A DNA stretch of 64,000 nucleotides, taken from the IMG/VR virus record IMGVR_UViG_3300026484_000007, positions 62,001-126,000 of that record; one strand, given 5' to 3'. Shown piece by piece: positions 21,419-54,866 of this stretch. The notes under the pieces were generated by a model that was not told where the DNA came from, did no database searches, and saw nothing but the letters and a program-made list of their open reading frames with translations. The translations under genes were made by a program, and so were the position numbers. How positions within the stretch are numbered: position 1 is the first letter of the stretch; every line of letters starts with the position of its first letter.

Positions 21419-22807
21419 TCACTCCTTTCTTTCTAAATTTTCTAAAGCTTTTTTTCTGAGAATACAACTACCACATTCACCACATGGTTCTCCATTTTTA
21501 GGATAATAACATGAGAATGATAAATTAAGAATTTCATAAAATTTATTTTTACCAAATTCTTTTACGAATTCTTTGATCATATTTGTCTTCGTTCTATTGA
21601 TATATGGAGCTTTCATCCCAAACCCCGTGAAGAATTTTCCACCATGATTTAATACATTTTCCATATTATCCATCCAAGCAGAATTATTATCACCGAAAAC
21701 TTGTCCTTCTGATAAATTTAATCCGAAGACAATTAATCCTAAACTTACTCCATCTTTTTCTGCGATAGATTTAATTATTTCTGCAAAAATAGAATTTCTA
21801 AAAGGAATATAACTTAAATTTTCTTCAGTTTCTCTTTCATCACCTTTTGATGATTTATCCGTAAGTTTTAAGTTAGTATCTAAAATAGATGCTAATCCAT
21901 TAATTATATTTTTTACATCAATAATTCTGAAAGAATATTGATAATCTGGAAAGTCTTTTTTTACTAATTCAATAAACTTTTCAGTAGCAGCAATTTCTTC
22001 TTGAGTACTATTATTACCATAATCAAAATAAATAAAATTAATTTTGATTGCATCTTCATTGAAAATCAACGAAATGTGTTTTTCGATTTCATCAATTACT
22101 TTATAAGCACTTAATGAAATATCCATTCCACCACTAAAACTTATATAAATATTTTTATATACGTCTGATGGCCTATCGCAATGAGCTTCTGTTTTTATAA
22201 ATACACCATCCTTAAAATTAAATTGTGGATCCATGCTATAAATTTTTAAATTTTCGTGTTCATGTTTCCAAAGACCCATTCCTTTATTGACGATATTGTA
22301 TTCGTCGAAATCTGGGAAAATCTCAAGATATGTATATAATCCTTTAATGAAATTTTCTGGTAAATCAGAATGAAACATTATTGCTTCAGTATCAACTGTT
22401 AATTCTTTATTTAATTTTTTTTCAACTTCTTTATCATTCGAAATTGTTCCATGAACCCAATACCAATCATGTTCATTGATAAATGGAGGCATTGTTTCTA
22501 ATCCAGATTTTTCCATTTCAGGTTTCTGTCTAGAAAATAATACTAAGTGACATTTTTGAAATAAAAAAAGCGATTGTTTTTTTAATTCTTCAAAAATTTT
22601 ATCAAAAAAATCATTGTACGTATCTTCAAAAGATTCGCCTTTGCTGATTATAGATTTATAACTACTATACGGATTTCCTAACCACAATAATGTGAAAGAA
22701 TAACCATCTCCACCTTTTTTATTCAATTCATATTCTAATAATTTTTTATTAGATAATAAATCCATTATATTCTTAATTTGATCATTGCTGTAAAGTATTT
22801 GACACAT
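21419..22807 (-). CDS. queC: Gat-QueC: Ntn glutamine amidotransferase domain fused to 7-cyano-7-deazaguanine synthase
   Basis: N-terminal M-C, HGTISN and VDTE in the GATase-II part; SFSGGMD PP-loop, YIPFRN, SCY..PCGECGSC..R. Confidence 0.88.
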   Translation of the reverse strand: MCQILYSNDQIKNIMDLLSNKKLLEYELNKKGGDGYSFTLLWLGNPYSSYKSIISKGESFEDTYNDFFDKIFEELKKQSLFLFQKCHLVLFSRQKPEMEKSGLETMPPFINEHDWYWVHGTISNDKEVEKKLNKELTVDTEAIMFHSDLPENFIKGLYTYLEIFPDFDEYNIVNKGMGLWKHEHENLKIYSMDPQFNFKDGVFIKTEAHCDRPSDVYKNIYISFSGGMDISLSAYKVIDEIEKHISLIFNEDAIKINFIYFDYGNNSTQEEIAATEKFIELVKKDFPDYQYSFRIIDVKNIINGLASILDTNLKLTDKSSKGDERETEENLSYIPFRNSIFAEIIKSIAEKDGVSLGLIVFGLNLSEGQVFGDNNSAWMDNMENVLNHGGKFFTGFGMKAPYINRTKTNMIKEFVKEFGKNKFYEILNLSFSCYYPKNGEPCGECGSCILRKKALENLERKE

Positions 22808-22880
22808 TTTTTTCTCCTTTTGATTTTAATTTTTTAAAATACTTAAATACTTAAAACGCTTAAAACAAAAGAGATCTTTT

Positions 22881-24809
22881 TTAGATCTCTTTTTGCTCTT
22901 CTTCAATTTCTTCATTTTCTTCATCAGATAAAATGAATAAACCTCTTGCATGAATACTTAATGAATCATATGCTCCAGTTTTAAAAACTGAATTTTTAAA
23001 ATTTACTGCATAAATTTTTTCACCAGTATTTATTTCTTTTACTTCTTTTACATGAATTCCTCTATGTTTTCTTGCAGTCGCAAGAATTCCATGAGTTTCA
23101 AGATATTTTTTATCTTCTTCCAAAAGCTTTTCTAATCTTTCAGATTGTAATCTTAATTTTAAAGTATTAGGTTCTCTTTTAGATACAACATGATAGTATC
23201 TGAAATCTTCATCAATAACCATAGCTCTTAGACCAGTATCTTTTCCTCCAAAATCAGCATCTCCATTTAAATTAAAAACTCTAGAATTTTCATCCCCGTA
23301 ATTATATGGAAGCCAATCTACGTTTCTATGTCCATGAATTTGAAATTGATTTTCTTTAGTATGTTTTTCCCAAGTTTTTTTGATAACTTGCTCATCTCCA
23401 TATTTACCAATTCCTCTGATAATTTCTTCAGTTTTTAAAAAGATTTTTGGCGGCTGAATAATTCCTCCATGAGTAAATAAAATTTCTTTTCCTTTGAAAT
23501 CTATCCAAGCCATTTGAGCTAATTTAGAATAAAAATCTTTAATTGCTTTTAATTCTTTATCTTTATAATTTTCATAGATAAAATAAAAGGTTTTTCTTGT
23601 TTGTATTGAAATTAACCTTCTTAATTCTTTATCATAGTATTCTTCGATCTTTAAAAGATTAAATTTTATTCTTTCTAGTTTTTTAAGATTTTCATTGTAA
23701 GATCTAACATCTCTATAAATTTGAATAATTGAATCAAATATATCTGGATCAGATTCTTTGATTACATCTAAATTAAAATATTTTTGAAGTTTGTCTTTAG
23801 ACCAATCTTTTTTTAAATTAAAAAGAACGTTTTTAATTACTGACAGATCTTTTGGATCTGCAAAAGAACTTAAATGTTTTTCTTCGAAAAGTTCTTTATT
23901 TACCTCGAATCTTTTTTCGATCTCTTTTAACTTTTCATTAATTGATTTGATTATAGATTTATAATCATCAATTTTAGATTTAGCATCAATGTACTCATTG
24001 AAATATGTAAATCCTAATTCATGATTTCCTTGTAATAGCATTACATTTTCGTATTGAAAAATTTCCATAAAGAAATCAATTGTCTTCTTAAGATTTTCTT
24101 CGTCTGGAGCTCTATCAAAATAGTCTCCTAAAAATATCCAAAAATAATTAGGATCTTTTATAGATTCAATATTTTCTTCTTTTTTAATTTTATTAATTAA
24201 CTCTTCTAATTCATCGTAACAACCATGAACATCTCCGATAGCAATTACTTTTTGATATTGATTAAAATCAAATGATTTTTCTTTAGATTCTTTCCATTTA
24301 GAAAATTCATCCGGTTTAATTACTTCAACCCAACTTGGAATGTTTTGAGTTCTTTGTCTTTCAAAAATATTTTTAATTGCTTCTTCTGGAACATATTTAT
24401 GTGGTTCAAAAGATTCTAATCTTGATTTATTTCTTTTTAAAATTTCTTCTAAAGAAAGATCTCTGAAGTCAACTAAAGTTACTCTGTATCTGTATTTTTT
24501 AGCTAACTGTCTATATCTATTAATTAATTTAGAAGAACTATGAGTAGCATCGATTACCGTAAAATCTCCTCTCTTCATTCTTTCTTCTAAAAACGCAAAA
24601 ACAAGTTCCCAAACCCTTTTATCGTTTTTTGAGGAAATTGTTTTTATTAGAGAGTCTGGTTGAGAAACCGGACTCTCCATTTTAAGTCTAATATCATCTG
24701 GTTCAATAGCAAATGGTCTAAGACCATTTTTATTAATCCAAGTACTTTTGCCTGATCCAGGCGCCCCACATGTTAAAATTAAATTTCTCATTTTTCTCCT
24801 TTTTTCCAA
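22881..24809 (-). CDS. Polynucleotide kinase (AAA_33)-metallophosphoesterase with truncated RNA-ligase-like start
   Basis: GAPGSGKST, VIDATH; GDVHG, GDYFDR, GNHE, THGG, HGH; C-terminal NF..VF..ARGLF. Probable start 24791. Confidence 0.85.
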   Translation of the reverse strand: MEKRRKMRNLILTCGAPGSGKSTWINKNGLRPFAIEPDDIRLKMESPVSQPDSLIKTISSKNDKRVWELVFAFLEERMKRGDFTVIDATHSSSKLINRYRQLAKKYRYRVTLVDFRDLSLEEILKRNKSRLESFEPHKYVPEEAIKNIFERQRTQNIPSWVEVIKPDEFSKWKESKEKSFDFNQYQKVIAIGDVHGCYDELEELINKIKKEENIESIKDPNYFWIFLGDYFDRAPDEENLKKTIDFFMEIFQYENVMLLQGNHELGFTYFNEYIDAKSKIDDYKSIIKSINEKLKEIEKRFEVNKELFEEKHLSSFADPKDLSVIKNVLFNLKKDWSKDKLQKYFNLDVIKESDPDIFDSIIQIYRDVRSYNENLKKLERIKFNLLKIEEYYDKELRRLISIQTRKTFYFIYENYKDKELKAIKDFYSKLAQMAWIDFKGKEILFTHGGIIQPPKIFLKTEEIIRGIGKYGDEQVIKKTWEKHTKENQFQIHGHRNVDWLPYNYGDENSRVFNLNGDADFGGKDTGLRAMVIDEDFRYYHVVSKREPNTLKLRLQSERLEKLLEEDKKYLETHGILATARKHRGIHVKEVKEINTGEKIYAVNFKNSVFKTGAYDSLSIHARGLFILSDEENEEIEEEQKEI

Positions 24810-25261
24810 AATGATACTTCTTCAAAATAAAGACAATCATCGAAATCTTTTACGAATCTGTATTTCTCATCTAATTCGTATCTATTTTCGATAATGATAT
24901 CTTTATGAGCATATCTTTGAAGGATCATATCAATCCCAGTATTATAAATTCTCATGATCTTTTCATGATCAATGTCGATGATATTGTAATCATTAACAGA
25001 TTGAGAATTTTCTCCCGAAGCGTTTAAATCAATATTTAAATTAATATTTAAATCGCATTCTTCAATAAGTTCTTCATCAGTTGGTAAAACAATTTCATCA
25101 CTACCTTCTTTTTCAAAATCATAATCTCTAATGTGATTATACAATAATTCTTGCGCCGTCAAAAGACAAAGCGCATCTTCAGTTTCATCAGTAACGAAAG
25201 CTACTGTAATAATATCTTGATTTTCTTCCATTAAAGCTATAGCTCTTTGATTTTTAAACAT
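24788..25261 (-). CDS. Hypothetical acidic protein
   Basis: AAGGAG RBS. Confidence 0.6.
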   Translation of the reverse strand: MFKNQRAIALMEENQDIITVAFVTDETEDALCLLTAQELLYNHIRDYDFEKEGSDEIVLPTDEELIEECDLNINLNIDLNASGENSQSVNDYNIIDIDHEKIMRIYNTGIDMILQRYAHKDIIIENRYELDEKYRFVKDFDDCLYFEEVSFWKKGEK

Positions 25262-25288
25262 TCGTGCTCCTTTTAATTTTAATTTTAA

Positions 25289-43289: not shown

Positions 43290-44438
43290 TTAATTAAGAT
43301 AAATTATTTTTAATTTATCTTTTATTTTTTTAATCTCATCAATTATATATTGATGATACGTAAATACGACTACCATTACATTTTCATCTCCAAAATTAAT
43401 AATATTACTTAATTCATAAGATACATCTTCTGAAGTCTTATGACTTACAGTATTGATAATTTTTGGTGGATTTCTAAATAAAGATTCTAAAGTATTTTTT
43501 AATTCAAGTATCATTTGATACTTAGGAGAATTCTTTAATGCTACTTTTCCACTTACATTATTTTTATATTCTCCTCCTATAAATACCACTTTGCCTTTAT
43601 TGTCAGTTTTATCTAAGAATTCGAAGATTGTTTTTTTCAAATCATTTAAAATAATTTGATAATAATCTTCATTGATATTATCTGCAGCTTTCCACAGACT
43701 CTCTACTGGACCTGATAAATACTTATTATCTACTCCTATGCATTCTCCACCGATCAATCCTGGATGGATCCCTTTGACAAAATTGTCTTTTAATTCACAA
43801 ATTCTAATAGTCTCTTCAAATACTTTTTGATTAAATATTTGCATTTTAAATGAATTCATTAGCGAAATTAAAATATACCTTTGAGTGTTTTCAAAGATTT
43901 TGGCTAAAATTACTGCTTCTGGAAAATCAGAATATTCAGCTCCAAATATCTTTTCAATATAATTTTTTAAATCGGCAGTACTCCAGTAAGTTAATTTAAA
44001 ATTAACATTGTCTCCAGGCGAGTATCTTTCTGGGACTACTGCTTTACTTTTAGATTTTATACCATAAAAAAATGATACATCGAATGTTGATCTTACTACG
44101 ATCGGATTATTTGAAAAATATTTATTAATTAATCCTGCAAAAAGAAGATCTTCTTCTTTATTTCCTTTGGTGTTTATGCAAATATAAATTTTTGCTTTTT
44201 CATCAATTCTTTTAGAAACTTCTTTCATGAATTCTTTTTCACCCCAATGGATAATAAATGCATCACCTATTTTATTCAATTCTTTTAAATTCTCAGGCGT
44301 TTTGATATCCAGAAAAAGAATTTTATTTTCTGGAAAAGTTTTTTTGATATCTTGAGCTGTTTTTAATCCTATTAAACCAGCTCCAATTATAATTTCATTA
44401 TAATTTTCATTCAATTTACAAATTTCTTGAATTAGCAT
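43290..44438 (-). CDS. Divergent UDP-glucose/GDP-mannose-family nucleotide-sugar dehydrogenase
   Basis: IGAGLIG, VVRST, PERYSPG, AKIFENT.R, PGLIGGECI (catalytic Cys). Confidence 0.72.
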   Translation of the reverse strand: MLIQEICKLNENYNEIIIGAGLIGLKTAQDIKKTFPENKILFLDIKTPENLKELNKIGDAFIIHWGEKEFMKEVSKRIDEKAKIYICINTKGNKEEDLLFAGLINKYFSNNPIVVRSTFDVSFFYGIKSKSKAVVPERYSPGDNVNFKLTYWSTADLKNYIEKIFGAEYSDFPEAVILAKIFENTQRYILISLMNSFKMQIFNQKVFEETIRICELKDNFVKGIHPGLIGGECIGVDNKYLSGPVESLWKAADNINEDYYQIILNDLKKTIFEFLDKTDNKGKVVFIGGEYKNNVSGKVALKNSPKYQMILELKNTLESLFRNPPKIINTVSHKTSEDVSYELSNIINFGDENVMVVVFTYHQYIIDEIKKIKDKLKIIYLN

Positions 44439-44456: not shown

Positions 44457-45512
44457 TTAATAATTTGCAGTTTTGCAATAATGAAATGGAATATGTTCAA
44501 ATGTTATATTCTTAGCCATTCTGAAAAAATATGCATCAATGTTTATAGCTGGGACTTTATACTTATTTTTTATTTTTAATAAAATATGCAAAGTCGCAAA
44601 TCTTAATAAGAATTCTTCATTTGAATTTTCAATTAAGAGTTCTTTATTTTTAATTTTTTTAAGAATTTTTTTGAATCTCTTAGTTTCTGGAAATAAGTTA
44701 TAGAAATTCATTGCTTGTGGAAGTCTGTAATCGATAGGAATTTTATTATAATTTTTAACAATTTCCGCGAGACGCTCCACATCTATCTTATTAATAATTC
44801 TATATTTTTTTATATAATAATTGAAAAAATATGCTCCAAGAATCTTCTTTTTTTCAAAGAAATCTTGAGTAAAGATAGGGTTATCAAAATTAACTCCGTA
44901 CTTTAATAAAGATTCCAAAATATTAATTCTTTCTTGCAACATTGGATATTGCTTTTCAGTCATTAATAATATTAAAGAATTTATAACTTTCTTATAAAAG
45001 TTTATATAATTTTTTAAACGAAATTCGTATTTGTCTTTATCAGATAATTCTAAATAATAAAAAATATAATTTCTAATTTCTTTTTTAAAGATCTTATCTA
45101 GATCTTTAGAATAAACCCAAGAATCAATATTACCTTTATAATTTGGCGTCCACCAGAACCCAAATTGCAAAGCACTATTAATAACAGAATATCCATAAAT
45201 TAATTCGCTAAAATCAAAACACATATTGTTTCTTTTTTTTACTTCGATGCTCGTTGAAGTTGGAATACAGTATTCTCTTTTATTGATCCAAGAAAGATCA
45301 GGAAATAAAGGTTTTGCTTTTTTTAATCTATCTTTTAAATCAGGCATTCCTTTATAGAATTTTTTTAATTTTTTATCGATTTGATTTTTTTCTTTATCCG
45401 TTAAAATATTTTTTAATTCTTTATACATTTTTTCTCCTTGCGTATATTTTATATATTTAAAAAGAGATCCTAAAAAGATCTCTTTTCTCTTTCTTTTTTC
45501 TGCTCTCTCCAT
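44457..45512 (-). CDS. Qng1/DUF2419-like queuosine-nucleotide N-glycosylase (salvage) homologue
   Basis: ALQFGFW, P.LQER, FEKK, IDYRLPQ, EE..LR.AT, AINID..F, PFH...T.NY C-terminus; probable start 45428. Confidence 0.65.
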   Translation of the reverse strand: MERAEKRKRKEIFLGSLFKYIKYTQGEKMYKELKNILTDKEKNQIDKKLKKFYKGMPDLKDRLKKAKPLFPDLSWINKREYCIPTSTSIEVKKRNNMCFDFSELIYGYSVINSALQFGFWWTPNYKGNIDSWVYSKDLDKIFKKEIRNYIFYYLELSDKDKYEFRLKNYINFYKKVINSLILLMTEKQYPMLQERINILESLLKYGVNFDNPIFTQDFFEKKKILGAYFFNYYIKKYRIINKIDVERLAEIVKNYNKIPIDYRLPQAMNFYNLFPETKRFKKILKKIKNKELLIENSNEEFLLRFATLHILLKIKNKYKVPAINIDAYFFRMAKNITFEHIPFHYCKTANY

Positions 45513-45943
45513 TTTTCGTCAATTACATCTAATACTTCTGGAACATTATCATGATATTTTTTATGACAATATTCGCAAAGTACGATATAATTTACTTTTT
45601 TATCAAAATGCATATCCATAATTTCTTGACAAACATCAAAATCAGTTTTATCGTCTAAAGTATTCATATTGACATGCATTTGAAGATAATCATCTACGAC
45701 ATCAAATAAAGTTTTTGGATAATGATGAGATTCCATTTTAACGACATCTCTACTTATCCCACAAATTGGGCATTCATCAATTCCAATTTTGCTTCGTTTC
45801 TGCCAAATATCATATGACATTGATCCTCTAATTAATTTTTGAAGATGTTTAATACAACGAATATATTGTCTATCATTGCTTAAGTCATAATTATACCATA
45901 TCGAGGTATTTTCATTTTCTTCTTTGAATCGACTATCAGCCAT
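45470..45943 (-). CDS. HNH-like zinc-binding protein
   Basis: CPICG..ESHH..LCEYCHKKYH. Confidence 0.6.
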   Translation of the reverse strand: MADSRFKEENENTSIWYNYDLSNDRQYIRCIKHLQKLIRGSMSYDIWQKRSKIGIDECPICGISRDVVKMESHHYPKTLFDVVDDYLQMHVNMNTLDDKTDFDVCQEIMDMHFDKKVNYIVLCEYCHKKYHDNVPEVLDVIDEKWREQKKEREKRSF

Positions 45944-47238: not shown

Positions 47239-48108
47239 TTATTGATTTATAAGTCTTTTAAAATTTTTATTAATCTCCGATCTTAAACGTTGATAGTCCC
47301 AAAAGTTTAGAACGGTATATTTAATAAATTTATTTTCATCGTAATCTTCAAGATAATCGTTTTGAATGATACTGAATTCTTTTGATATAAAAAAATCGAA
47401 TTTAAAATCTTGAACATAGTATCTTTTAACCGAATTTTTATCAATGAATAAATGAACCATTTGATTCTTTTTTTCATCTATAAAAGAATCGATTATAGTT
47501 AATTCTAATTCATTAATAATTTCTTCATTTAACTCAGTTAAAAATGGATTAATCTTGTTTGTATCTTTTTTAGATCCTTTTGCTAAAGAATTAATTTTTT
47601 TATTTAAATCATCTTGTATGATTTTATTGATTTTTTCATTTAAGTTTTTCTGTTCCTTTTTATCAATTTTCGAAGCCTTAAATTTTTTAATTTCTTGACC
47701 GACTCTATTTGCAACTAACTCTCTCGTTCTAATATCGATGAATTGCTCTTGTTCTTTTTTAGCAACTTCTTCTAATTCTTTAATTTTATTTAATTCTTGA
47801 TAAAAATTAAAAAAGTCGCTTCTTATATCGTATTTTTTTATATCATTTTCGATAATTATCATTTTTAAATAATTTAAAAATAATAAAGGATTTTTTTCAA
47901 TTTCCTGATTGAATAATAAATTATATTTTGATAAAAATTGAACAATTTTCGGTCTTCTCCATAATGCTTCAAATAAATAAATAATATTCCTTTTGACCTC
48001 TTTTTCTGACGACAAAAAAACGTCAGGAATAGATTCCTGACGTGATGTAATATAATCAATTAAATCTCTTACCGTAACTTTAGCTTTCGAAGATTTATTT
48101 TTGGCCAT
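47239..48108 (-). CDS. Hypothetical protein
   Basis: GGAG RBS; contains an internal terminator-like motif. Confidence 0.65.
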   Translation of the reverse strand: MAKNKSSKAKVTVRDLIDYITSRQESIPDVFLSSEKEVKRNIIYLFEALWRRPKIVQFLSKYNLLFNQEIEKNPLLFLNYLKMIIIENDIKKYDIRSDFFNFYQELNKIKELEEVAKKEQEQFIDIRTRELVANRVGQEIKKFKASKIDKKEQKNLNEKINKIIQDDLNKKINSLAKGSKKDTNKINPFLTELNEEIINELELTIIDSFIDEKKNQMVHLFIDKNSVKRYYVQDFKFDFFISKEFSIIQNDYLEDYDENKFIKYTVLNFWDYQRLRSEINKNFKRLINQ

Positions 48109-48814
48109 TTTCTACTCCTGAATTTCCAAATAATTTTTCAAGAGTTTTTTGGTTTAAAGTATAAACATGAATTCCTGTTACAAAAACTTTTACTGCATCA
48201 AATAAATAATCATGTGTTTTAACTTTATTGATTTCAGCAATTGTTTCAGTAATTAATTCTCTGTATTTTTCTGGTTTGATAAAATTATCAATTAGAATTT
48301 TTATTAATATTGGAGAGAAAGTTTCTGATAAAGCATTCGCAATCATATTTACGAATTGATCAAAATCAATTTCTTTCCATTCATTGTGTTTATCGTTTGT
48401 ATCTTTTTTAGATTCGTGTTCTTTATTGAAGTCAATATACACTCTTCTAATAGTTGAATAAGATAATCCTTTTGGTTCAAATTCTTCTCTTAATTCTTTT
48501 AATGTTTTTTCTGGATTTTTTTCTAAATATTTTAATAAGTCTCTTTTTAAAAGTTGACTCATTTTTCTATTAGCTTTTTTTCTTACCTCTTTTTTCTCTT
48601 GAATTTCTTTTTCATGAGAGCGTTTTTCATCCAAAATCTCATTTACAATATCTTGATATTTTTTATATTTTAAATCTCTAATTCTAGTAACAGTCGAAAC
48701 GCTTGTTTCGTAATAATTAGCTAAATCTTTTAAAGTCATAGGTATTTCTTTATTCTTAATTTTATTAGCCGCAACCCAAATATCATAAATATGTTGATCA
48801 GATAATCTTGTCAT
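48095..48814 (-). CDS. Tandem HTH DNA-binding protein
   Basis: TLKDLANYYETSVSTVTRI and TLKELREEF..LSYSTIRRV. Confidence 0.6.
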   Translation of the reverse strand: MTRLSDQHIYDIWVAANKIKNKEIPMTLKDLANYYETSVSTVTRIRDLKYKKYQDIVNEILDEKRSHEKEIQEKKEVRKKANRKMSQLLKRDLLKYLEKNPEKTLKELREEFEPKGLSYSTIRRVYIDFNKEHESKKDTNDKHNEWKEIDFDQFVNMIANALSETFSPILIKILIDNFIKPEKYRELITETIAEINKVKTHDYLFDAVKVFVTGIHVYTLNQKTLEKLFGNSGVENGQK

Positions 48815-48836: not shown

Positions 48837-50075
48837 TTAATATGTTTTTAGAATGTTTTTACATTTAGATTCAAGAATTTCTGTCGAATCTTTTTCGTTT
48901 AAATAAATATCTAAAAATTCTTGAATAATCTGTAGATTATTATAAATCTCAACTGCAAATCTTCCTTGTTCAAATAAAGGATGGATCTTTTTAAGATCAT
49001 CAATTGAATAATCAAAATATTTTCTTAGATCTTCTAATGATAAATTATCTAACAATTCGTGACTAAATTGAATTACATTATTAATATTTTGACACATAAA
49101 ATCTACAAAATCTTCATTTTCTAATTTTCCATGATTGCATAATAAATCTTTTTTTTCTTTAATTGTATCTAAAAAAGATTCTTTATTAGAATGATTATCT
49201 AACATCTTATCAAGATCGTTTATATCTTTAATGAATAAATAATCATCTTGATGTTTGCATACTAATGGTAGTTTATGTTCAATTTTGGCAAATCTTATCA
49301 ATTCACTTGAATCCATAGTAAATTCGATATTAATATCGTATTTACTTAAAAGATTTTCTAAGAAAATCGTTGTGAATATCATAAGTTTACTACTTTGACC
49401 TAATAAATGAAGATGAGTAATTTTTCCATTATTATCTCTAATTTTGCTTAATAGCCAAAATAAAAATGGAACAGCATGACTAAATTTCGCATTAGTCTCT
49501 TTTTTTAATCCTACTAGACCTCCAAAAGAATATCTAGTATAGTATTGATATATATTATGCTTATCCATAAGCTCTTTCCATAAATCAAAGACTGGTTCAA
49601 TTCTCGTTTGGACAATAAAAAGTTGCTTATCAGCAATTTCTGGAATTTCTTTAATCAATTGAATACTTTGACTAATACTGTAATCATTGAATTCAATTTG
49701 CTCTTGTTTATTCCAACCACGATTCATAACGTCCAATGAGAATATGTAATCTATATCATCTTTGTATTTTTTTAGTAAATAATGATATGTTCTGATGTAT
49801 TCTTTAACTCTACGTTTAGAAACATATCCCATAATAACCTGGAACCCTCCCGAATCCACGAATAATTTTATTTTATCTGCGACTTCAGGATAAATCTCTT
49901 TATATTTATTTTTCTGCTTAACGATTTTCTTCATTTGCTTATCGATTTGAAATAAAGTCCAAGATTTATTAGTAGTTGGCTCTGCCATTGATACTAAGAA
50001 ATTTGGAAAATATTTAAACGTAACCTTCGTTATTCTTTCTGGAGCTGCTGCTCCAAGTACTGCTACATATTTCAT
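48837..50075 (-). CDS. DpdA/TGT-like guanine transglycosylase
   Basis: FVDSGGFQ, SLDV, FGGLVG, HLHLLG, TMDSS motifs of the TGT/DpdA TIM barrel. Confidence 0.8.
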   Translation of the reverse strand: MKYVAVLGAAAPERITKVTFKYFPNFLVSMAEPTTNKSWTLFQIDKQMKKIVKQKNKYKEIYPEVADKIKLFVDSGGFQVIMGYVSKRRVKEYIRTYHYLLKKYKDDIDYIFSLDVMNRGWNKQEQIEFNDYSISQSIQLIKEIPEIADKQLFIVQTRIEPVFDLWKELMDKHNIYQYYTRYSFGGLVGLKKETNAKFSHAVPFLFWLLSKIRDNNGKITHLHLLGQSSKLMIFTTIFLENLLSKYDINIEFTMDSSELIRFAKIEHKLPLVCKHQDDYLFIKDINDLDKMLDNHSNKESFLDTIKEKKDLLCNHGKLENEDFVDFMCQNINNVIQFSHELLDNLSLEDLRKYFDYSIDDLKKIHPLFEQGRFAVEIYNNLQIIQEFLDIYLNEKDSTEILESKCKNILKTY

Positions 50076-50079
50076 AAAT

Positions 50080-51645
50080 TTACCTCCATTCGTAAACTAA
50101 ATTTCCACTATCATATATCCTTCGATAACCAGCTTCGATCATAATTAATTCTGCTGTTTTGGAAGAATCATAATTGGGGAATTTTTTCAATTTATGTTTT
50201 TGAAACTTAACTCTATGATAGAGTTTTAATTCTGGATCACTCATTTTAAAATAATAAAAATTAGGTTGAGTAGTTCTTAGATATCTAAATCCAATACTTT
50301 TATAAAGATTATTTAAGCTACTAGCCCATCTACGATTAGCATATGAAATTACTGATTTAGGTTGGAATTTTTTCAGAAAATATTTAAACAATCTCTGAGC
50401 GCATCCAACGCATGCAGTAAATTTTTTTGAAGCGAATCTAATGAGCTCGTACTCATAATTTTTATTAAACCTTGGCTTAGCAAAAGCCATACAAGAGATT
50501 AACTCTTGATCATGATATAAGCCTAAATTTATTTTCGACGAACATGATCCTTGCAAATGATTTTCATTAAAAAAATCATTTGTTTTTTTGGACGTTATTT
50601 CTTTAATTTCTAACTTTCTTGCAAAGTATTTTTCTTTAATAACTCCAAGCTTATAAGAGATTACTGATTTCCAAATCTCTTTAATTCTTGGGTTAATCCA
50701 TTCATTTTCAAATATATGCAAAAGATTAATGTTTTTACTTTCGCAAGCTTCAGTCTTCTTTAGATGACGATCTTTATCAGCTTCCAAAGAATGCCAAAAG
50801 AGACCATTGTATTCTATTGCTAGATTTTTCTTTGGAATTAAAATATCTAATTCTTTTGGTTTTATGGTTTTTCTATCGTTTTCTATTATTTTTCCATCGT
50901 AAATTTCTTTAATATAATTTACGATTTCCTTTTCCGTTTGCGAATAATTTGCATTTTTTACGTAATTGATATTTAATCTTTTTAAAGTATTGTGGGCAGC
51001 AACTTGCCCACAATTGAAATAATCCATAAATTCTTTCAATTTAAAATGTTTATTTTCATCTAAAAAATTTTCTATTATAAAATTTGAATCATTATATTTA
51101 TCTAGATTATTTATTTTGCCTGTACTTGAGGATATATAATTGTATTTTTTTAAGCAAGTTTTTTTTGCTTTTTCTTTTATTTCTGGTAATTGCGCAGTGC
51201 TTCGAACTCCGTATTTTTTAATATTCGTCTCAATCAATTTTGATTTTGATTGTTCTGACATTGATGGAACTGGAACTCCATATTTTTCCATTGAAGTTTT
51301 TATAATTTTATTTTTCTTTTCAATGTTTTTATTTGAACAATTCGTGGAGCAAAATTGCCCATAAGAACCACCACTTCGCCATCTTAATTCTTTAGAACAT
51401 TCTTTACATACTGGTATATAATTTATTTTATTTTTTATATGCCAGATAATCTGCTTACCAGTAAAGCCAGAAACTTCAATTTTAAAATGATTATTTTTTA
51501 AAAATTTATTTAAATTAATTATAGTTAATTTTTTAGCATTATCTATATAATTTTTAAAAATATCTGAAGTTTCATATAATTTAATTAAATCATCCAAAAT
51601 AGGAAGCGTTGTAAGCGTACCATTCATTTGATTTTCCTTCTTCAA
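50080..51645 (-). CDS. Hef-like homing endonuclease (KYGV repeats, PD-(D/E)xK/Vsr-like nuclease, C-terminal accessory domain)
   Basis: CKEC..FCS..C, KYGV repeats, ELDI.IP..NLAIEYNG.FWH, ELIRFA..ISYA.RRW, IYDSG. Confidence 0.75.
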   Translation of the reverse strand: MKKENQMNGTLTTLPILDDLIKLYETSDIFKNYIDNAKKLTIINLNKFLKNNHFKIEVSGFTGKQIIWHIKNKINYIPVCKECSKELRWRSGGSYGQFCSTNCSNKNIEKKNKIIKTSMEKYGVPVPSMSEQSKSKLIETNIKKYGVRSTAQLPEIKEKAKKTCLKKYNYISSSTGKINNLDKYNDSNFIIENFLDENKHFKLKEFMDYFNCGQVAAHNTLKRLNINYVKNANYSQTEKEIVNYIKEIYDGKIIENDRKTIKPKELDILIPKKNLAIEYNGLFWHSLEADKDRHLKKTEACESKNINLLHIFENEWINPRIKEIWKSVISYKLGVIKEKYFARKLEIKEITSKKTNDFFNENHLQGSCSSKINLGLYHDQELISCMAFAKPRFNKNYEYELIRFASKKFTACVGCAQRLFKYFLKKFQPKSVISYANRRWASSLNNLYKSIGFRYLRTTQPNFYYFKMSDPELKLYHRVKFQKHKLKKFPNYDSSKTAELIMIEAGYRRIYDSGNLVYEWR

Positions 51646-52010
51646 TATATATCTAAGACATTCTTTGCTTGATAATATTGGGAAATTTTAATATGCTGAT
51701 CTTGAAAGATCTTGATTTTTTCAATTATCTTAAATAATCTTTTTTTGAGTTTTTGATCGCTATATAATAATCTCTGATAATAAAAATCAACCAGATTATT
51801 TAAAAACTGATTATCAGTTTGATTATCTGGGATTAAAAATATCTTTTCATTTTTTAAAAATTCATCTAACGATTCATTTTTTATTTCATTATCTTTAATA
51901 AAAAGCACTTCGTTATTTTCATTATCTAAAAATAATAATGAATTATCATAGATCACTGGATAGATTTGATCCAGCAACATTTCTAAATTATTAATTTTTA
52001 TTTCTTTCAA
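51642..52010 (-). CDS. Hypothetical protein (TTG start)
   Basis: AAGGAG RBS. Confidence 0.55.
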   Translation of the reverse strand: MKEIKINNLEMLLDQIYPVIYDNSLLFLDNENNEVLFIKDNEIKNESLDEFLKNEKIFLIPDNQTDNQFLNNLVDFYYQRLLYSDQKLKKRLFKIIEKIKIFQDQHIKISQYYQAKNVLDIY

Positions 52011-52058
52011 TTTTTCTCCTTTGCTTTTAAATTGATTCGATTAAGACTCAATTAAGTC

Positions 52059-52589
52059 TTAATCAAGTCTTAACGGTAAATCATTTTCTTTAAAGAAAAT
52101 AGAAATCGCTGAAAAACCATCAAGGTTTTTATTATGAGGTTTATGATAATCGACTGCAATAATTTCAATATCATAATTCATTAATTTAGCAAATTTAAGA
52201 ATCTGTCTTTTTAATTTTGCAATTTCATGCGTTCCTGAATCCATAAGTTTTTCTCCATTCATTGATTGTTTATAAAAAACATGATTTAAACCATCAATTA
52301 AAAATTTTACTTTAAAAATTTTTGGATCTGTTGGAGATTCATTATGTTCATGTAATAAATGTTTGTAATAACCTTTTATCTTATTAGGAACTGTTTCATC
52401 TTCAAGTCTTTTTAAAATATTTTCAACGAATACGATAACATCGTATTTAGCATATAAAAATAATTCATGATAAATTCTAACCCAAAGATTAAATCTTTGA
52501 AATTGAAAATCTTCTTTTTCTAACTCCTCTGTATATATTTTTAATAAATACGATAACTCTTTTTTTTGATTTGATGTAATTTGATTCAT
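52059..52589 (-). CDS. Hypothetical protein
   Basis: AAGGAG RBS. Confidence 0.6.
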   Translation of the reverse strand: MNQITSNQKKELSYLLKIYTEELEKEDFQFQRFNLWVRIYHELFLYAKYDVIVFVENILKRLEDETVPNKIKGYYKHLLHEHNESPTDPKIFKVKFLIDGLNHVFYKQSMNGEKLMDSGTHEIAKLKRQILKFAKLMNYDIEIIAVDYHKPHNKNLDGFSAISIFFKENDLPLRLD

Positions 52590-52617
52590 TTTCTTCTCCT
52601 TCGGTTTTTAATTTTTT

Positions 52618-52833
52618 TTACGCGAATAATATAATTATACAAATAGTGAAAGCTATAAATGATAGCAACAATACTGTATTTTTAGTGATATTTGGAATTT
52701 TTTCTAATTGACCAAATTCGTTTTTATATAGATTATTTAATTCGGCTCCGATTGATCCAGCTAATAAAGTAAATATTGCAAATACACTAAAAATAATAAA
52801 AAATTTTTCCGGAAAACTTAAACTTAAATCCAT
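52618..52833 (-). CDS. Small two-TM membrane protein
   Basis: Two hydrophobic helices. Confidence 0.55.
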   Translation of the reverse strand: MDLSLSFPEKFFIIFSVFAIFTLLAGSIGAELNNLYKNEFGQLEKIPNITKNTVLLLSFIAFTICIIILFA

Positions 52834-52842
52834 TTTTTATCC

Positions 52843-52888
52843 TTTTTTTCTGACGACAAAAAAAAGTGATCTTTAAAAGATCACTTTC
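52843..52888 (-). terminator. Hairpin + T7-GTCGTCAG-A7
   Basis: aaagtgatctttaaaagatcacttt hairpin next to the motif. Confidence 0.65.
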
Positions 52889-53555
52889 TCATCGTTCTCA
52901 TTATTTCTTTTTCTTTTTGATATTTTTCATTTTCTGTTGCAATAGCTAAAGCTTTTAATTGCTCTCCTAAACCTATTGCCATCCAAGGATCCATTGCAAT
53001 ATTAATTTTTCCTTGCCCATTGTAGTTTAAGAAAACTTTATGTTTATTTGGATCTCTTGTGCTTGGAGCTGCAGAAACTGCAACTTTTTTAGTCACTCCT
53101 TGTCCTTGATTTCCTGCAAACTTACTGCTATCAGTAAATATCATGAAATCACATTGTTTATACATTGCTGCATATTTAAGAGCTTCTGCCAATGCAAATA
53201 AATCTCTATTAGAGATTTTCATTGTCTCTTTTCTGCTTTGGTCATAACTTCTACCAGTTGCTTTTGTACTATCTTGAATTCCAGGTACGAACATTAAAAA
53301 TGCGTTGCTCGTTGGAAATTGTTTTCCAAGATCTACAAAACCAGTTGCTTCAAATAATTGCGTTGTAGGAAGATTAACTTTTCCTACTATATCTAACTCA
53401 TATTTAAAATTTCCAGTATTTCCAGTGTTTCCAACATTTCCTCCAGCTGATTGAGACCCTTGTGGTGCTTGAGGTGCTTGTTGTGTTTGTGGAGCTGCCG
53501 GTGGAACCGGAGCTTGAGGTACTTGAGGGGCTGGCATTTGATGTGCTTGTGTCAT
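52881..53555 (-). CDS. P/Q-rich N-terminus protein, possible Whirly/PC4-like ssDNA-binding protein
   Basis: F.PG..RSYDQSRKETMKIS..DL weakly resembles the Whirly YDW.RK..F.LS..E motif. Confidence 0.35.
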   Translation of the reverse strand: MTQAHQMPAPQVPQAPVPPAAPQTQQAPQAPQGSQSAGGNVGNTGNTGNFKYELDIVGKVNLPTTQLFEATGFVDLGKQFPTSNAFLMFVPGIQDSTKATGRSYDQSRKETMKISNRDLFALAEALKYAAMYKQCDFMIFTDSSKFAGNQGQGVTKKVAVSAAPSTRDPNKHKVFLNYNGQGKINIAMDPWMAIGLGEQLKALAIATENEKYQKEKEIMRTMRK

Positions 53556-53602
53556 TTTATCTCCTTTTTATAAGTTTATTTTTTTTAATTTTTTTAATTT
53601 TT

Positions 53603-54313
53603 TTAGAAATTAATTGTAATTCCGTCGTCATCATCTTCTTCAGTCTCTTCAATTACTTCTTGAGTTTTTTCTTGAGAGTTTGAAGATGGATGGATACCTA
53701 TATTTTCCGTCGTTACTCCATTTACGATAATATCGTCAGATGGTATATCTTCTTTGATTAATAATGATTCAAGTACATTATTAAAATCTTCGATATCACT
53801 AACATCTTGTGATAAAGAATGTTCAATAATATCTTTAACAGCTTGAACATCATTTTCATCAAAAACTGCTTTTCTTCTACCTTTCTCTTCGAAAACTGGT
53901 TCTATAAATTCGTGTATACTTTGAAGAGTTTCTTGATATTGAAGATTTATTAATTTTATAACATCTTCTGGAATATCATCTTTGCTAACGTATAATGGAA
54001 TTTTTATATAACCGATTTTATCAAGAAAGGCGTTAAGTCCTTTTTCTTTTAAATGCTCTTCTTTTCCATTGATAAAATTTTTAAGATTAAGATAAGTTTG
54101 ATTTAATCCTAATTTTTTATACAGAGCATTTTTATTTGGAATATCTTTAAGAATTAATCTTAATTCCTCCTCAAAATTGATTATTTCATTTTTTGAGATT
54201 TCTTGATTAATATCTTGATTAACATCTTGGCTAATATTTTGACTTTGACTTTCAGGTCCCTCGTTTTTATGAATTTCTTGATTCATTTCTTCTCCTTTTA
54301 AAAGCTCTAACAT
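53603..54313 (-). CDS. Hypothetical acidic protein
   Basis: Probable start at MNQEI; acidic tail. Confidence 0.6.
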   Translation of the reverse strand: MLELLKGEEMNQEIHKNEGPESQSQNISQDVNQDINQEISKNEIINFEEELRLILKDIPNKNALYKKLGLNQTYLNLKNFINGKEEHLKEKGLNAFLDKIGYIKIPLYVSKDDIPEDVIKLINLQYQETLQSIHEFIEPVFEEKGRRKAVFDENDVQAVKDIIEHSLSQDVSDIEDFNNVLESLLIKEDIPSDDIIVNGVTTENIGIHPSSNSQEKTQEVIEETEEDDDDGITINF

Positions 54314-54374
54314 ATATCTTTAATTGATCTTTGAAAGATCATTTGCGTTCTAATTCTACTCAATATCTCGCGAC

Positions 54375-54866
54375 TTATAGATCCCACGGAAATAACAACC
54401 AACCTTTTGGTTTTTTTTCTGCGTAATAATCTACTAAGTCTCCTTTATTTCTTCCTTTATACATAACTGCTGTATAAATTTCAACATCTGCGAATTCATT
54501 ATTTGCGTCTAAAATTGCTTTAATTGTTTCGCCAGTATCAGTCAAATCATCGACTAATAAAATTTTTTTGCCATCAAATTTTTTTAATTGATGCCTGATA
54601 TGATTTATAATATCATCGGTTACTTCTTTAGGCTCAGCATCATCTTCATAAAGAGTTACATCTATTAAATCAGTTTCTCTAATATTAAGATAATAACTTA
54701 AATATCCTCCTGGAACAATTCCTCCTCTATTTATCATCACTATTTTATCAAATTTTTTATCTTCATGACATACATCAGATTGTATTTCTTCTGCCAATTT
54801 TTTACATGCGTTTTGAACATCTTCTGGCGTAATTAATACTTTTCCATCATCCAATTTTAGCATCAT
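54375..54866 (-). CDS. Type I purine phosphoribosyltransferase (Gpt-like)
   Basis: INRGG, LLVDDLTDTGET PRPP loop, WLLFPW C-terminus. Confidence 0.88.
   Translation of the reverse strand: MMLKLDDGKVLITPEDVQNACKKLAEEIQSDVCHEDKKFDKIVMINRGGIVPGGYLSYYLNIRETDLIDVTLYEDDAEPKEVTDDIINHIRHQLKKFDGKKILLVDDLTDTGETIKAILDANNEFADVEIYTAVMYKGRNKGDLVDYYAEKKPKGWLLFPWDL

What the first reader, a model, noticed from the sequence alone, without database searches (positions are those of the whole stretch)
21419..54866. Dispersed 7-deazaguanine DNA-modification pathway (Gat-QueC + DpdA-like), with possible salvage arm
Seen: Gat-QueC (21419), DpdA/TGT-like (48837), Qng1-like (44457), Gpt-like PRTase (54375). Established: QueC makes preQ0, Gat-QueC is linked to archaeosine (G+) synthesis, and phage DpdA exchanges guanine in DNA for 7-deazaguanines as anti-restriction. 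Inference: the genome carries dG+ or dPreQ0, and the PRTase could recycle excised guanine. FolE, QueD and QueE were not seen in the window.
Basis: partly seen in the sequence, partly recalled or inferred. Interest (0 to 1): 0.65.

Follow-up and report, generated by a model that had tools for sequence, protein, structure and literature searches.

The report
Jumbo-phage 7-deazaguanine DNA modification genes
An uncultured 273-kb phage from a hydrothermal vent carries a full gene set for replacing guanine in its DNA with a 7-deazaguanine base, built around a very divergent base-swapping enzyme plus two accessory enzymes that seem to recycle the bases.

Summary

- **Gat-QueC** (w21419-22807): an N-terminal Cys2 amidotransferase fused to a QueC domain. 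It aligns end to end with a phage Gat-QueC (hhalign 99.3%).
- **DpdA-like** (w48837-50075): no Pfam or NCBIfam hit, but the model (pLDDT 94.8) is a TGT barrel (Z 18). The TGT active-site motifs are invariant in its family. It lacks the Zn site and the N-terminal lid.
- **Linkage of the DpdA-like gene:** its relatives sit within 10 kb of FolE in 10 of 11 related loci and of QueE in 8 of 11. They share contigs with Gat-QueC in 5 of 5.
- **Qng1-like** (w44457-45428): the fold and catalytic residues of the queuine-salvage glycosidase are kept.
- **PRTase** (w54375-54866): Gpt-like. Among 50,697 phage records its relatives occur almost only in phages carrying FolE or 7-deazaguanine genes. These include the three lineages known to replace all G (CP220, phiST, immuto), and in immuto the gene lies inside the cluster.
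- **Missing genes found:** FolE, QueD, QueE and a second QueC lie elsewhere in the same genome.

The most likely product is dG+ DNA, possibly at high replacement. The chemistry is untested. I rate this a new variant of a known kind.

The parts
21419..22807 (-). Gat-QueC: an N-terminal class-II (Cys2) glutamine amidotransferase domain fused to a QueC PP-loop ATPase domain
   Evidence: PF06508 E 3.7e-25 at residues 248-457 and phrog_1550 E 1e-26. The sequence shows an SGGMD PP-loop and a C-terminal Cys cluster. In 32 homologues M1-C2, R93, H119-G-T and D139 are invariant. The profile hits asparagine synthetase B's N-terminal domain at E 0.005. PF13537 is present in 2 homologues. hhalign to Pantoea phage Vid5 Gat-QueC gives 99.3% probability and E 1.6e-20 over residues 30-453.
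48837..50075 (-). DpdA-like guanine/7-deazaguanine transglycosylase: a divergent TGT-fold enzyme with no Zn site and no N-terminal lid
   Evidence: The AF2 model has pLDDT 94.8. All top 50 Foldseek PDB hits are TGTs. VIA gives Z 18 with 290-316 residues aligned to arcTGT, QTRT1 and Z. mobilis TGT, starting at TGT residues 34-43. Invariant family motifs are D74-SGG-x-Q, D115, Q156, G185-G-L, L225-G and D255-S-S. These line up with E. coli TGT D89, D143, Q187, G213-G214, M244-G245 and D264. No member has a CxCxxC motif. Relatives lie near FolE, QueD and QueE.
44457..45428 (-). Qng1/DUF2419-like 7-deazaguanine nucleotide N-glycosidase (the ORF is open up to 45512; the likely start is 45428)
   Evidence: PF10343 at 30.3 bits against a cut-off of 25. 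12 of 15 family members hit PF10343, best E 2.9e-22. The model has pLDDT 84. The top 11 PDB hits are all DUF2419/Qng1, followed by a gap to 8-oxoG glycosylases. Invariant K193, D233-Y234, D298 and the C-terminal Y323 match StQng1 K199, D231-Y232, D298 and Y323 (PMC9881137). Only 13 relatives exist among 1.84 billion representatives.
54375..54866 (-). Gpt-like (6-oxopurine type) phosphoribosyltransferase, an accessory gene of phage 7-deazaguanine systems
   Evidence: PF00156 E 7.7e-17, xanthine PRTase model E 1.7e-20 but below cut-off, phrog_8995 E 1.1e-20. The nearest solved relatives are S. solfataricus GpT-2, P. horikoshii purine PRTase and E. coli XGPRT. Phage relatives are essentially restricted to FolE/7-deazaguanine phages. 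It is present in 4 of 5 related jumbo contigs.
47239..48108 (-). Conserved neighbour of unknown function (289 aa), between the DpdA-like and Qng1-like genes
   Evidence: Homologues lie within 10 kb of the DpdA-like gene in 7 of 11 related loci, between QueD and FolE in L015 and L017. It has no family hit, and the Atlas gave no usable lead.
45470..45943 (-). Conserved neighbour (157 aa), HNH / T5-type nicking-endonuclease-like
   Evidence: Homologues lie near the DpdA-like gene in 8 of 11 related loci. It hits phrog_12252 at E 4.6e-16 and weakly an HNH phrog. Atlas feature hits include HNH_2 and Phage_T5_Nicking_endo clusters, which are leads only.
50080..51645 (-). HNH homing endonuclease directly upstream of the DpdA-like gene. 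It is context: a likely mobile insertion that helped scatter the cluster.
   Evidence: phrog_3339 'homing endonuclease' at E 5.4e-127 and DUF7487. It is absent at this position in most related loci.

Best explanation
The window belongs to a 272.6-kb uncultured jumbo phage from a hydrothermal-vent metagenome. The phage encodes a complete but scattered 7-deazaguanine DNA-modification system. The proposed steps are as follows.

1. **Base synthesis.** FolE, QueD, QueE and a stand-alone QueC, all outside the window, turn GTP into the free base preQ0.
2. **Amidination.** Gat-QueC uses glutamine-derived ammonia to make the amidine base G+ (archaeosine base), before or after insertion.
3. **Insertion.** The divergent TGT-fold enzyme exchanges guanine in phage DNA for that base through a covalent Asp255-deoxyribose intermediate. 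One free guanine is released per exchange.
4. **Guanine recycling.** The Gpt-like PRTase converts released guanine plus PRPP into GMP. This removes a competing product and refills the GTP pool that FolE consumes.
5. **Base salvage.** The Qng1-like glycosidase frees 7-deazaguanine bases from nucleoside monophosphates, such as those from degraded modified DNA or host queuosine nucleotides, and returns them to the transglycosylase.

The purpose is protection of phage DNA from restriction and other DNA-targeting defences.

What is shown: gene identities, folds, conserved active-site residues and gene linkage. What is inferred: DNA as the target, G+ as the product, and the substrates of the PRTase and the Qng1-like enzyme.
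For: - **Pathway completeness.** FolE and QueD are present. For the QueE-like radical-SAM gene, the five best NCBIfam models are all QueE. QueC is present, as is Gat-QueC.
- **Transglycosylase.** It has the TGT fold at Z 18, and both catalytic Asp residues and the base-pocket residues are invariant.
- **Physical linkage.** FolE lies within 10 kb of the transglycosylase gene in 10 of 11 related loci and QueE in 8 of 11. QueD is listed next to it in L015 and L017.
- **Co-occurrence with Gat-QueC.** 5 of 5 related contigs carry both.
- **Published precedent.** FolE, QueD, QueE, Gat-QueC and DpdA give dG+ in phage 9g (PMC6884629).
- **PRTase family.** In 50,697 phage records it hits 17 records. 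Of these, 13 belong to four lineages that carry FolE. Three of those lineages are the published 100%-replacement phages CP220, phiST and immuto_2-6A (PMC10516641).
- **PRTase position.** It sits inside the immuto cluster, in the order QueD, QueE, PRTase, FolE, DpdA. It sits next to FolE in Brevundimonas phage StAshley.
- **One related contig.** PRTase, QueE, the Qng1-like gene and the DpdA-like gene are co-directional within 10.7 kb.
- **Qng1-like enzyme.** Fold and catalytic residues are kept.
Against: - There is no chemical evidence of any modified base.
- The transglycosylase lacks the structural Zn site that is conserved in all TGTs and DpdAs (PMC10164549).
- It has about zero net charge, with a C-terminal domain of -9, unlike the basic DNA-binding face described for bacterial DpdA.
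- It is not recognisably related by sequence to DpdA1 or DpdA3 (hhalign E 0.04-0.09). There is no tblastn hit in phage records, and a profile search of the CP220 genome found nothing.
- The Qng1-like gene is missing from 3 of 5 related contigs, including the one rated 100% complete, so it is dispensable.
- The PRTase's substrate is unknown. A PRTase acting on 7-deazaguanine would point to a different mechanism.
- The genes are scattered over about 100 kb in this genome. Co-regulation is therefore not shown.
Confidence: 0.6

Rival explanations
1. Nucleotide-level route. The PRTase couples the 7-deazaguanine base (CDG, preQ0, ADG or G+) to PRPP, as ToyH and TubE do in toyocamycin and tubercidin synthesis. 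The ribonucleotide is then phosphorylated, reduced to the dNTP and built into DNA by the phage polymerase. The TGT-like enzyme has only a minor or proofreading role. This would explain complete replacement of G in the phage lineages that share this PRTase.
For: - The PRTase family tracks exactly the phage lineages with 100% replacement.
- It lies inside or beside the deazaguanine genes.
- In StAshley it follows RNR alpha and beta, a dNMP kinase and FolE.
- In phiST it lies near RNR.
- The ADG nucleoside was reported in CP220-infected cells (as cited in PMC10516641).
- PRTases do this chemistry in tubercidin clusters (10.64898/2026.04.15.718813).
Against: - Every one of these phages also keeps a TGT/DpdA homologue with an intact active site. 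That would be unnecessary on this route.
- The nearest solved relatives of the PRTase are 6-oxopurine (guanine/xanthine) enzymes.
- A Qng1-like nucleotide glycosidase in the same genome would undo the PRTase product.
- I did not look for a dGTP-excluding enzyme, and none turned up.
Confidence: 0.15
2. tRNA-directed system. The TGT-like enzyme inserts preQ0, G+ or salvaged queuine into tRNA, either host tRNA or the phage's own tRNA-Asn(GUU). This would tune decoding of NAU/NAC codons in a 26%-GC genome. The Qng1-like enzyme would supply queuine as in the eukaryotic salvage route.
For: - The fold's closest solved relatives are tRNA enzymes.
- The pairing of Qng1 with a TGT mirrors eukaryotic queuine salvage (PMC9881137).
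- The genome carries a tRNA-Asn(GUU).
- The protein is not basic.
Against: - The protein lacks the N-terminal lid and the Zn-pinned insertion that bind the anticodon arm in bacterial TGT (PMC10164549).
- PF01702 does not detect it.
- The genome has no QueF. I did not search for QueA or QueG/H.
- The nucleophile motif reads D-S-S as in phage DpdA1, not D-C-V as in TGT.
- Published work holds that every phage found to carry 7-deazaguanines in its DNA encodes a DpdA-family protein, and proposes that family as a signature of such modification (PMC10516641).
Confidence: 0.1
3. The 'salvage arm' is not part of the system. The PRTase is ordinary purine salvage for a large phage. The Qng1-like protein is an HhH DNA glycosylase used for something else, such as attacking the modified DNA of competing phages, or repair.
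For: - The Qng1-like gene is absent from 3 of 5 relatives and from all GenBank phages.
- Qng1 has a DNA-glycosylase fold (PMC9881137).
- Host HhH glycosylases that attack 7-deazaguanine DNA exist (10.1101/2025.10.29.685425).
- In this genome the PRTase lies 4.3 kb from the transglycosylase gene, with six other ORFs between them.
Against: - The PRTase family's distribution is far too skewed toward FolE-bearing phages to be generic salvage.
- It shows repeated gene adjacency in unrelated lineages.
- The Qng1-like family keeps the nucleotide-enclosing C-terminal Tyr and the deazaguanine-binding Asp of true Qng1.
Confidence: 0.12

Closest known systems
Phage 9g / Vid5-type dG+ system (FolE, QueD, QueE, Gat-QueC, DpdA1)
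   Same: It has the same gene set and the same Gat-QueC architecture (hhalign 99.3% over both domains). In 9g this set gives dG+ in DNA (PMC6884629).
   Different: - Gat-QueC is only about 22% identical.
- The transglycosylase is not a DpdA1 (hhalign E 0.044).
- The genes are scattered over about 100 kb instead of forming one operon.
- There is an extra stand-alone QueC, a PRTase and a Qng1-like gene.
- The genome is 273 kb rather than about 57-61 kb.
[quoted passage not shown]
   Same: They share the same PRTase family and a TGT homologue too divergent for Pfam. CP220 and immuto have large genomes (phiST is 79 kb). In immuto the PRTase sits inside the cluster.
   Different: - DpdA3 proteins are about 260 aa, against 412 aa here with a C-terminal helical domain.
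- No sequence similarity is detectable.
- Those phages make dADG, dDG or fdPreQ1 and do not use Gat-QueC.
Bacterial DpdA (S. Montevideo, PDB 7UI4) and tRNA-guanine transglycosylases
   Same: They share the (beta/alpha)8 barrel, the two catalytic Asp residues and the Gly-Gly base-pocket loop. Like bacterial DpdA, this protein lacks the TGT N-terminal beta lid.
   Different: - It has no CxCx2Cx22H zinc site.
- No DpdB-like partner was sought or seen.
- It is not basic overall.
- It is not detected by PF01702 or by a family profile against PDB sequences.
Qng1 / DUF2419 queuosine-5'-monophosphate glycosidase (eukaryotes and some bacteria)
   Same: It shares the fold, the HhH Lys/Asp pair, the deazaguanine-binding Asp and the catalytic C-terminal Tyr.
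   Different: - It is phage-encoded and found in a DNA-modification context.
- Only the C-terminal third matches the Pfam model.
- Identity to solved Qng1 is 12-16%.
- The likely substrate is a preQ0/G+ (deoxy)nucleotide rather than Q-5'MP. This is inferred.

Membership tests
TGT/DpdA transglycosylase superfamily | (beta/alpha)8 TGT barrel fold | tested here: met
   The model has pLDDT 94.8. All top 50 Foldseek PDB hits are TGT. VIA gives Z 16.5-18.0 with 290-316 residues aligned at rmsd about 4 A.
TGT/DpdA transglycosylase superfamily | Catalytic Asp pair and base-pocket residues (Z. mobilis D102, D156, Q203, G229-G230, D280) | tested here: met
   D74, D115, Q156, G185-G186 and D255 are invariant in 32 homologues. 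They occur in the same order and motif context as E. coli TGT D89, D143, Q187, G213-G214 and D264. Local hhalign registers agree. The mapping is by motif, not by residue-level superposition.
TGT/DpdA transglycosylase superfamily | Structural Zn site CxCx2Cx22H (conserved in TGT and DpdA, PMC10164549) | tested here: not met
   None of the 32 members has CxCxxC. Only one column has Cys in 40% or more of the members.
DpdA (DNA-directed) as opposed to tRNA TGT | Absence of the TGT N-terminal beta-sheet lid | tested here: met
   Model residue 1 aligns to TGT residues 34-43. The ORF cannot extend upstream, because the preceding gene ends at w50080.
DpdA (DNA-directed) as opposed to tRNA TGT | Genomic association with 7-deazaguanine synthesis genes in a virus | tested here: met
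   FolE lies within 10 kb in 10 of 11 related loci and QueE in 8 of 11. QueD is adjacent in L015 and L017. Gat-QueC is on the same contig in 5 of 5.
DpdA (DNA-directed) as opposed to tRNA TGT | Exchange of guanine in DNA for a 7-deazaguanine base | not testable with these tools
   This needs an enzyme assay or LC-MS of DNA.
Named phage subfamilies DpdA1-DpdA4 | Detectable sequence relationship to a subfamily member | tested here: not met
   There is no tblastn hit in 50,697 phage records. The family profile finds nothing in CP220. hhalign gives E 0.044 against Vid5 DpdA1 and 0.086 against immuto DpdA3. BFVD structural hits reach TM of at most about 0.5 at 11-17% identity. DpdA2 and DpdA4 were not tested directly.
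Gat-QueC | C-terminal QueC domain with PP-loop and Cys cluster | tested here: met
   PF06508 at E 3.7e-25. S225-x-G227-x-D229 of the SGGMD PP-loop and C433, C442, C445 and C448 are invariant.
Gat-QueC | N-terminal class-II (Ntn, Cys2) glutamine amidotransferase domain | tested here: met
   M1-C2 is invariant, and R93, H119-G-T-I-x-N and D139-T-E are present. The profile hits AsnB's N-terminal domain at E 0.005. PF13537 occurs in 2 homologues. hhalign to Vid5 Gat-QueC spans the domain. Pfam alone does not detect it in this protein.
Gat-QueC | Formation of the G+ amidine | not testable with these tools
   Inferred from phage 9g (PMC6884629).
Qng1 / DUF2419 (PF10343) | Pfam gathering score and fold | tested here: met
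   30.3 bits against a cut-off of 25, C-terminal part only. 12 of 15 relatives hit PF10343. The top 11 PDB fold hits are all Qng1.
Qng1 / DUF2419 (PF10343) | Catalytic HhH Lys and Asp, ribose-stacking Tyr, base-binding Asp, C-terminal Tyr | tested here: met
   K193, D233, Y234, D298 and the terminal Y323 are invariant. They correspond to StQng1 K199, D231, Y232, D298 and Y323. W302 appears to be replaced by Phe. The mapping is by order and spacing.
Qng1 / DUF2419 (PF10343) | Hydrolysis of a 7-deazaguanine nucleoside 5'-monophosphate | not testable with these tools
   An enzyme assay is needed.
6-oxopurine PRTase (Gpt/XGPRT type) | Type I PRTase domain with a PRPP loop | tested here: met
   PF00156 at E 7.7e-17. 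A VDD-x-x-DTG motif aligns with GpT-2.
6-oxopurine PRTase (Gpt/XGPRT type) | Equivalog-level match to xanthine/guanine PRTase | tested here: not met
   The best model, NF006613, scores 73 bits against a cut-off of 138. The nearest solved relatives are GpT-2, P. horikoshii purine PRTase and E. coli XGPRT at E 2e-14 to 7e-10.
6-oxopurine PRTase (Gpt/XGPRT type) | Substrate (guanine versus 7-deazaguanine) | not testable with these tools
   An enzyme assay is needed.

The most novel reading that the evidence does not exclude
This vent jumbo phage and its roughly 185 metagenomic relatives would carry a fifth, zinc-free clade of DNA guanine transglycosylases. The Gpt-like PRTase family (phrog_8995) would be an unrecognised signature component of phage systems that replace most or all guanine. 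It would close a guanine to GMP to GTP to FolE to 7-deazaguanine loop, so that each excised guanine is rebuilt into the base that replaces it. Alternatively, it would feed 7-deazaguanine nucleotides to the polymerase. The Qng1-like enzyme would be the first viral 7-deazaguanine nucleotide glycosidase.
Probability: 0.3. Interest if true: 0.75.

Novelty: new variant of a known kind. Interest (0 to 1): 0.62.

Why it matters
7-deazaguanine DNA is one of the main ways phages hide from restriction enzymes. How some phages reach 100% replacement is still unsettled.

This locus adds three things:
- **A new transglycosylase clade.** It is large, unannotated and lacks the zinc site thought universal in the family. 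It extends the DpdA family, proposed as a marker of this modification, to jumbo phages of an extreme environment.
- **A testable genomic clue.** One PRTase family travels with these systems in at least five unrelated phage lineages, including all three published complete-replacement lineages. That bears directly on the question of post-replicative versus nucleotide-level insertion.
- **A phage copy of the queuine-salvage glycosidase.** This hints at base recycling during infection.

All three proteins can be expressed and assayed in E. coli without culturing the phage.

Tried and rejected
- **tblastn of the DpdA-like protein against 50,697 phage records:** no match.
- **phmmer and a family profile of it against PDB sequences:** nothing. 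Only structure revealed the fold.
- **PF01702 search of the whole genome:** nothing.
- **Family profile against the CP220 genome:** nothing.
- **hhalign of the family against single TGT, DpdA1 and DpdA3 sequences:** only short motif-level alignments with low probability. These were used only to check register.
- **PADLOC scan:** uninformative.
- **Pfam on the isolated Gat half:** nothing. The domain was settled by homologue conservation and hhalign instead.
- **QueF search:** it only re-found FolE weakly.
- **Palindrome statistics.** GATC is over-represented (O/E 1.21). G/C-containing 6-mer palindromes have a median O/E of 1.0, and CTAG and CATG are depleted. This fits protected DNA but is not diagnostic, so I give it no weight.
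- **Atlas look-alikes for the 289-aa neighbour:** no usable lead.
- **One mistaken call (15)** translated a whole locus and returned an error.
- **Not used: read laying.** All listed holders are kept as Logan's contigs, which by the tool's own description cannot show modified bases.
- **Not used: complex prediction.** No binding claim is made.
- **No tree of the TGT superfamily was built.** At 10-14% identity a sequence alignment would not be trustworthy.

Full report
**Setting.** The window is bases 62001-126000 of a 272,602-bp IMG/VR virus record, rated 97% complete by CheckV. GC content is about 26%. Genes are tightly packed on the minus strand and read cleanly in the standard code. Near-identical DNA occurs in hydrothermal-vent metagenome runs. 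Other window genes are typical of a large lytic phage:
- topoisomerase II subunits (w32893-36190);
- an RNA polymerase beta-like protein (w55333-57495);
- an SbcC-like ATPase (w19023-20978);
- a kinase/phosphoesterase fusion (w22881-24809).

**Gat-QueC (w21419-22807).**
- Residues 248-457 are a QueC domain (PF06508, E 3.7e-25).
- The sequence shows a PP-loop and a C-terminal Cys cluster.
- The N-terminal half is invisible to Pfam, but the protein begins Met-Cys.
- In 32 homologues M1-C2, R93, the H119-G-T-I-x-N motif and D139-T-E are invariant. This is the pattern of class-II Ntn amidotransferases.
- The family profile touches the glutaminase domain of asparagine synthetase B (E 0.005).
- Two homologues carry PF13537.
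- hhalign against the Gat-QueC of Pantoea phage Vid5 gives 99.3% probability over residues 30-453, which covers both domains.

**DpdA-like protein (w48837-50075).**
- It has no Pfam or NCBIfam hit and only a weak phrog_887 hit.
- It belongs to a well-populated family. 185 proteins matched in the word search, none with a Pfam domain, and many lie on contigs of 200-295 kb.
- An AlphaFold model built on 32 of them is confident (pLDDT 94.8).
- All top 50 Foldseek PDB hits are tRNA-guanine transglycosylases.
- VIA-align gives Z 16.5-18 over about 300 residues with archaeal TGT, human QTRT1 and Z. mobilis TGT.
- The family's invariant residues fall in the same order and local context as E. coli TGT:

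| This family | E. coli TGT |
|---|---|
| D74 in D-S-G-G-x-Q | D89 |
| D115 | D143 |
| Q156 | Q187 |
| G185-G186-L | G213-G214 |
| L225-G226 | M244-G245 |
| D255-S-S | D264 |

- The D-S-S nucleophile motif matches phage DpdA1 rather than the D-C-V of TGT.

Three things set this protein apart.
- The alignment to TGTs starts at their residues 34-43, so the N-terminal lid is absent, as in bacterial DpdA.
- No member has the CxCx2C zinc motif that is conserved in TGT and DpdA.
- It is not detectably related by sequence to DpdA1, DpdA3 or any protein in 50,697 phage records.

The nearest Atlas clusters are unannotated viral proteins.

**Does the DpdA-like protein belong to a 7-deazaguanine pathway?**
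- In the same genome I found FolE (179189-179980), QueD (182263-182859) and a radical-SAM protein (158063-158911). For that last protein, the five best NCBIfam models are all QueE.
- There is also a second, stand-alone QueC with a zinc-ribbon N-terminus.
- In eleven related loci (two are probably the same phage), FolE lies within 10 kb of the transglycosylase gene in ten and QueE in eight.
- Gene tables show QueD two genes downstream in L015 and L017. They also show FolE plus a Fer4_12 radical-SAM gene upstream in L018.
- Gat-QueC is on the same contig in 5 of 5 IMG/VR relatives.

In this genome the cluster has been pulled apart. A homing endonuclease sits directly upstream of the transglycosylase gene (phrog_3339, E 5e-127).

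Having both QueC and Gat-QueC suggests a division of labour. QueC would make preQ0 and Gat-QueC would make the amidine. By analogy with phage 9g, dG+ is then the most likely product (PMC6884629). This is inference.

**Qng1-like protein.**
- It passes the Pfam gathering score, but only over its C-terminal third.
- It is rare. There are 13 relatives at E 1e-3 or better among 1.84 billion representatives, and none in GenBank phages.
- Twelve of fifteen family members hit PF10343.
- The model's top eleven PDB matches are all Qng1/DUF2419, followed by a 300-fold gap in E-value to 8-oxoguanine glycosylases.
- The invariant residues K193, D233-Y234, D298 and the C-terminal Y323 correspond to the catalytic and substrate-binding residues of S. 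thermophilus Qng1 (PMC9881137).
- It is present in 2 of 5 related contigs and absent from the complete one, so it is an optional accessory.

**PRTase.**
- It is a type I PRTase closest to guanine/xanthine enzymes and is present in 4 of 5 relatives.
- The unexpected result came from tblastn against the phage collection, which matched only 17 records:

| Phage group | Records |
|---|---|
| Flavobacterium immuto phages | 4 |
| Cellulophaga phiST, phi13:1, phi19:2 | 5 |
| Campylobacter CP220 | 2 |
| Brevundimonas StAshley, MaInes | 2 |
| Unverified faecal scaffolds | 2 |
| Small fragments | 2 |

- CP220, phiST and immuto_2-6A are the three phages reported to replace all guanine, using DpdA3 (PMC10516641).
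- In immuto_2-6A the PRTase lies inside the cluster, in the order QueD, QueE, two small genes, PRTase, FolE, then DpdA, a formyltransferase and QueF.
- In StAshley it is the gene after FolE, which itself follows RNR and a dNMP kinase.
- In CP220 it is two genes from a radical-SAM gene.
- FolE is present in four of the five records checked.
- In related contig G002, PRTase, QueE-like, Qng1-like and DpdA-like genes are co-directional within 10.7 kb.
- None of the Escherichia, Pantoea, Vibrio or Pseudomonas QueC-bearing phages appear among the PRTase hits.
- The main text of the paper that defined DpdA3 never uses the word 'phosphoribosyl'. Two full-text searches found no paper linking the two. 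The library is incomplete, so prior notice elsewhere cannot be excluded.

**Mechanism.** The best-supported reading is the one given under best explanation:
1. De novo synthesis of the free base.
2. Amidination by Gat-QueC.
3. Post-replicative exchange by the TGT-fold enzyme through Asp255.
4. Conversion of the released guanine to GMP by the PRTase. This both removes a competing substrate and refills the GTP pool used by FolE.
5. Return of 7-deazaguanine bases from mononucleotides by the Qng1-like enzyme.

A PRTase and a nucleotide glycosidase in one genome make sense together if they act on different bases, guanine and deazaguanine. That is why I prefer recycling to the nucleotide-level rival. 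The rival is not excluded, and it is the more interesting possibility.

The tRNA rival is weakened in three ways. The tRNA-binding elements are missing. No QueF was found, and I did not search for QueA or QueG/H. Published work also holds that every phage found with 7-deazaguanine DNA encodes a DpdA-family protein (PMC10516641).

**Comparison and novelty.** The pathway as such is known. Three things are new here:
- a populous zinc-free transglycosylase clade outside DpdA1-4, found in jumbo phages;
- the consistent association of one PRTase family with these systems across at least five lineages;
- a phage Qng1 homologue.

I therefore rate it a new variant of a known kind. No chemistry was or could be tested here.

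Noticed in passing
outside the window: genome 258149-272592 (locus L013 4149-18592): A run of about eight or nine radical-SAM genes at the end of the contig, several of them SPASM/peptide-maturase-like. The best NCBIfam hits are PapB, HxsC4, NirJ, tungsten-cofactor maturase and viperin-like, all far below cut-offs. That is unusual for a phage.
   Followed up: partly
window 50080-51645, 48095-48814 and 45470-45943: The DpdA-like gene is flanked by a strong HNH homing endonuclease (phrog_3339, E 5e-127) and an HTH protein. A 157-aa HNH / T5-nicking-endonuclease-like gene lies further downstream. That last gene is conserved near the transglycosylase in 8 of 11 related loci, so it may be part of the system rather than a selfish insert.
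   Followed up: partly
window 47239-48108: A 289-aa protein with no family or structural lead is conserved next to the deazaguanine genes in 7 of 11 related loci, between QueD and FolE. It is a candidate for an unknown pathway component.
   Followed up: partly
outside the window: genome 180319-180780 (L011 5319-5780): A MazG / PRA-PH-like nucleotide pyrophosphohydrolase lies between FolE and QueD. If it is specific for (d)GTP, it could bear on the nucleotide-level rival.
   Followed up: no
outside the window: genome about 132.7-133.8 kb (L044 1441-2499) and L044 3078-3578: The second QueC has an N-terminal CxxC...CxxC zinc-ribbon extension. Two genes upstream is a 166-aa ORF that looked to me like a NADAR/YbiA-type N-glycosidase. 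That is from memory of the motif and was not tested.
   Followed up: partly
outside the window: genome 17865-18313: A cluster of five tRNA genes: Arg-TCG, Ser-GGA, Asn-GTT, Thr-GGT and Gln-TTG. tRNA-Asn(GUU) is a natural TGT substrate, which is relevant to the tRNA rival.
   Followed up: partly
window 43290-44438: An NDP-sugar dehydrogenase-like protein (TIGR03026, E 1.5e-13, below cut-off) lies directly downstream of the Qng1-like gene. Its role is unknown.
   Followed up: no
window 22881-24809: Directly upstream of Gat-QueC is a 642-aa fusion of an AAA_33 kinase domain and a calcineurin-like phosphoesterase. It resembles a polynucleotide kinase/phosphatase.
   Followed up: no
whole genome: GATC is over-represented (1602 observed, 1328 expected, z about 9), while CTAG and CATG are depleted. 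G/C-containing 6-mer palindromes show no general avoidance.
   Followed up: partly
outside the window: genome 179189-179980: FolE carries an N-terminal extension of about 95 residues. The Pfam domain covers residues 98-262 of 263. FolE homologues in the related loci L015, L017 and L018 are of similar length (256-267 aa).
   Followed up: no
phage record ON529865.1 (L050 7310-8465): Brevundimonas phage StAshley has FolE and this PRTase family side by side after RNR and a dNMP kinase. The downstream genes are unannotated. It may be an unrecognised 7-deazaguanine phage.
   Followed up: partly
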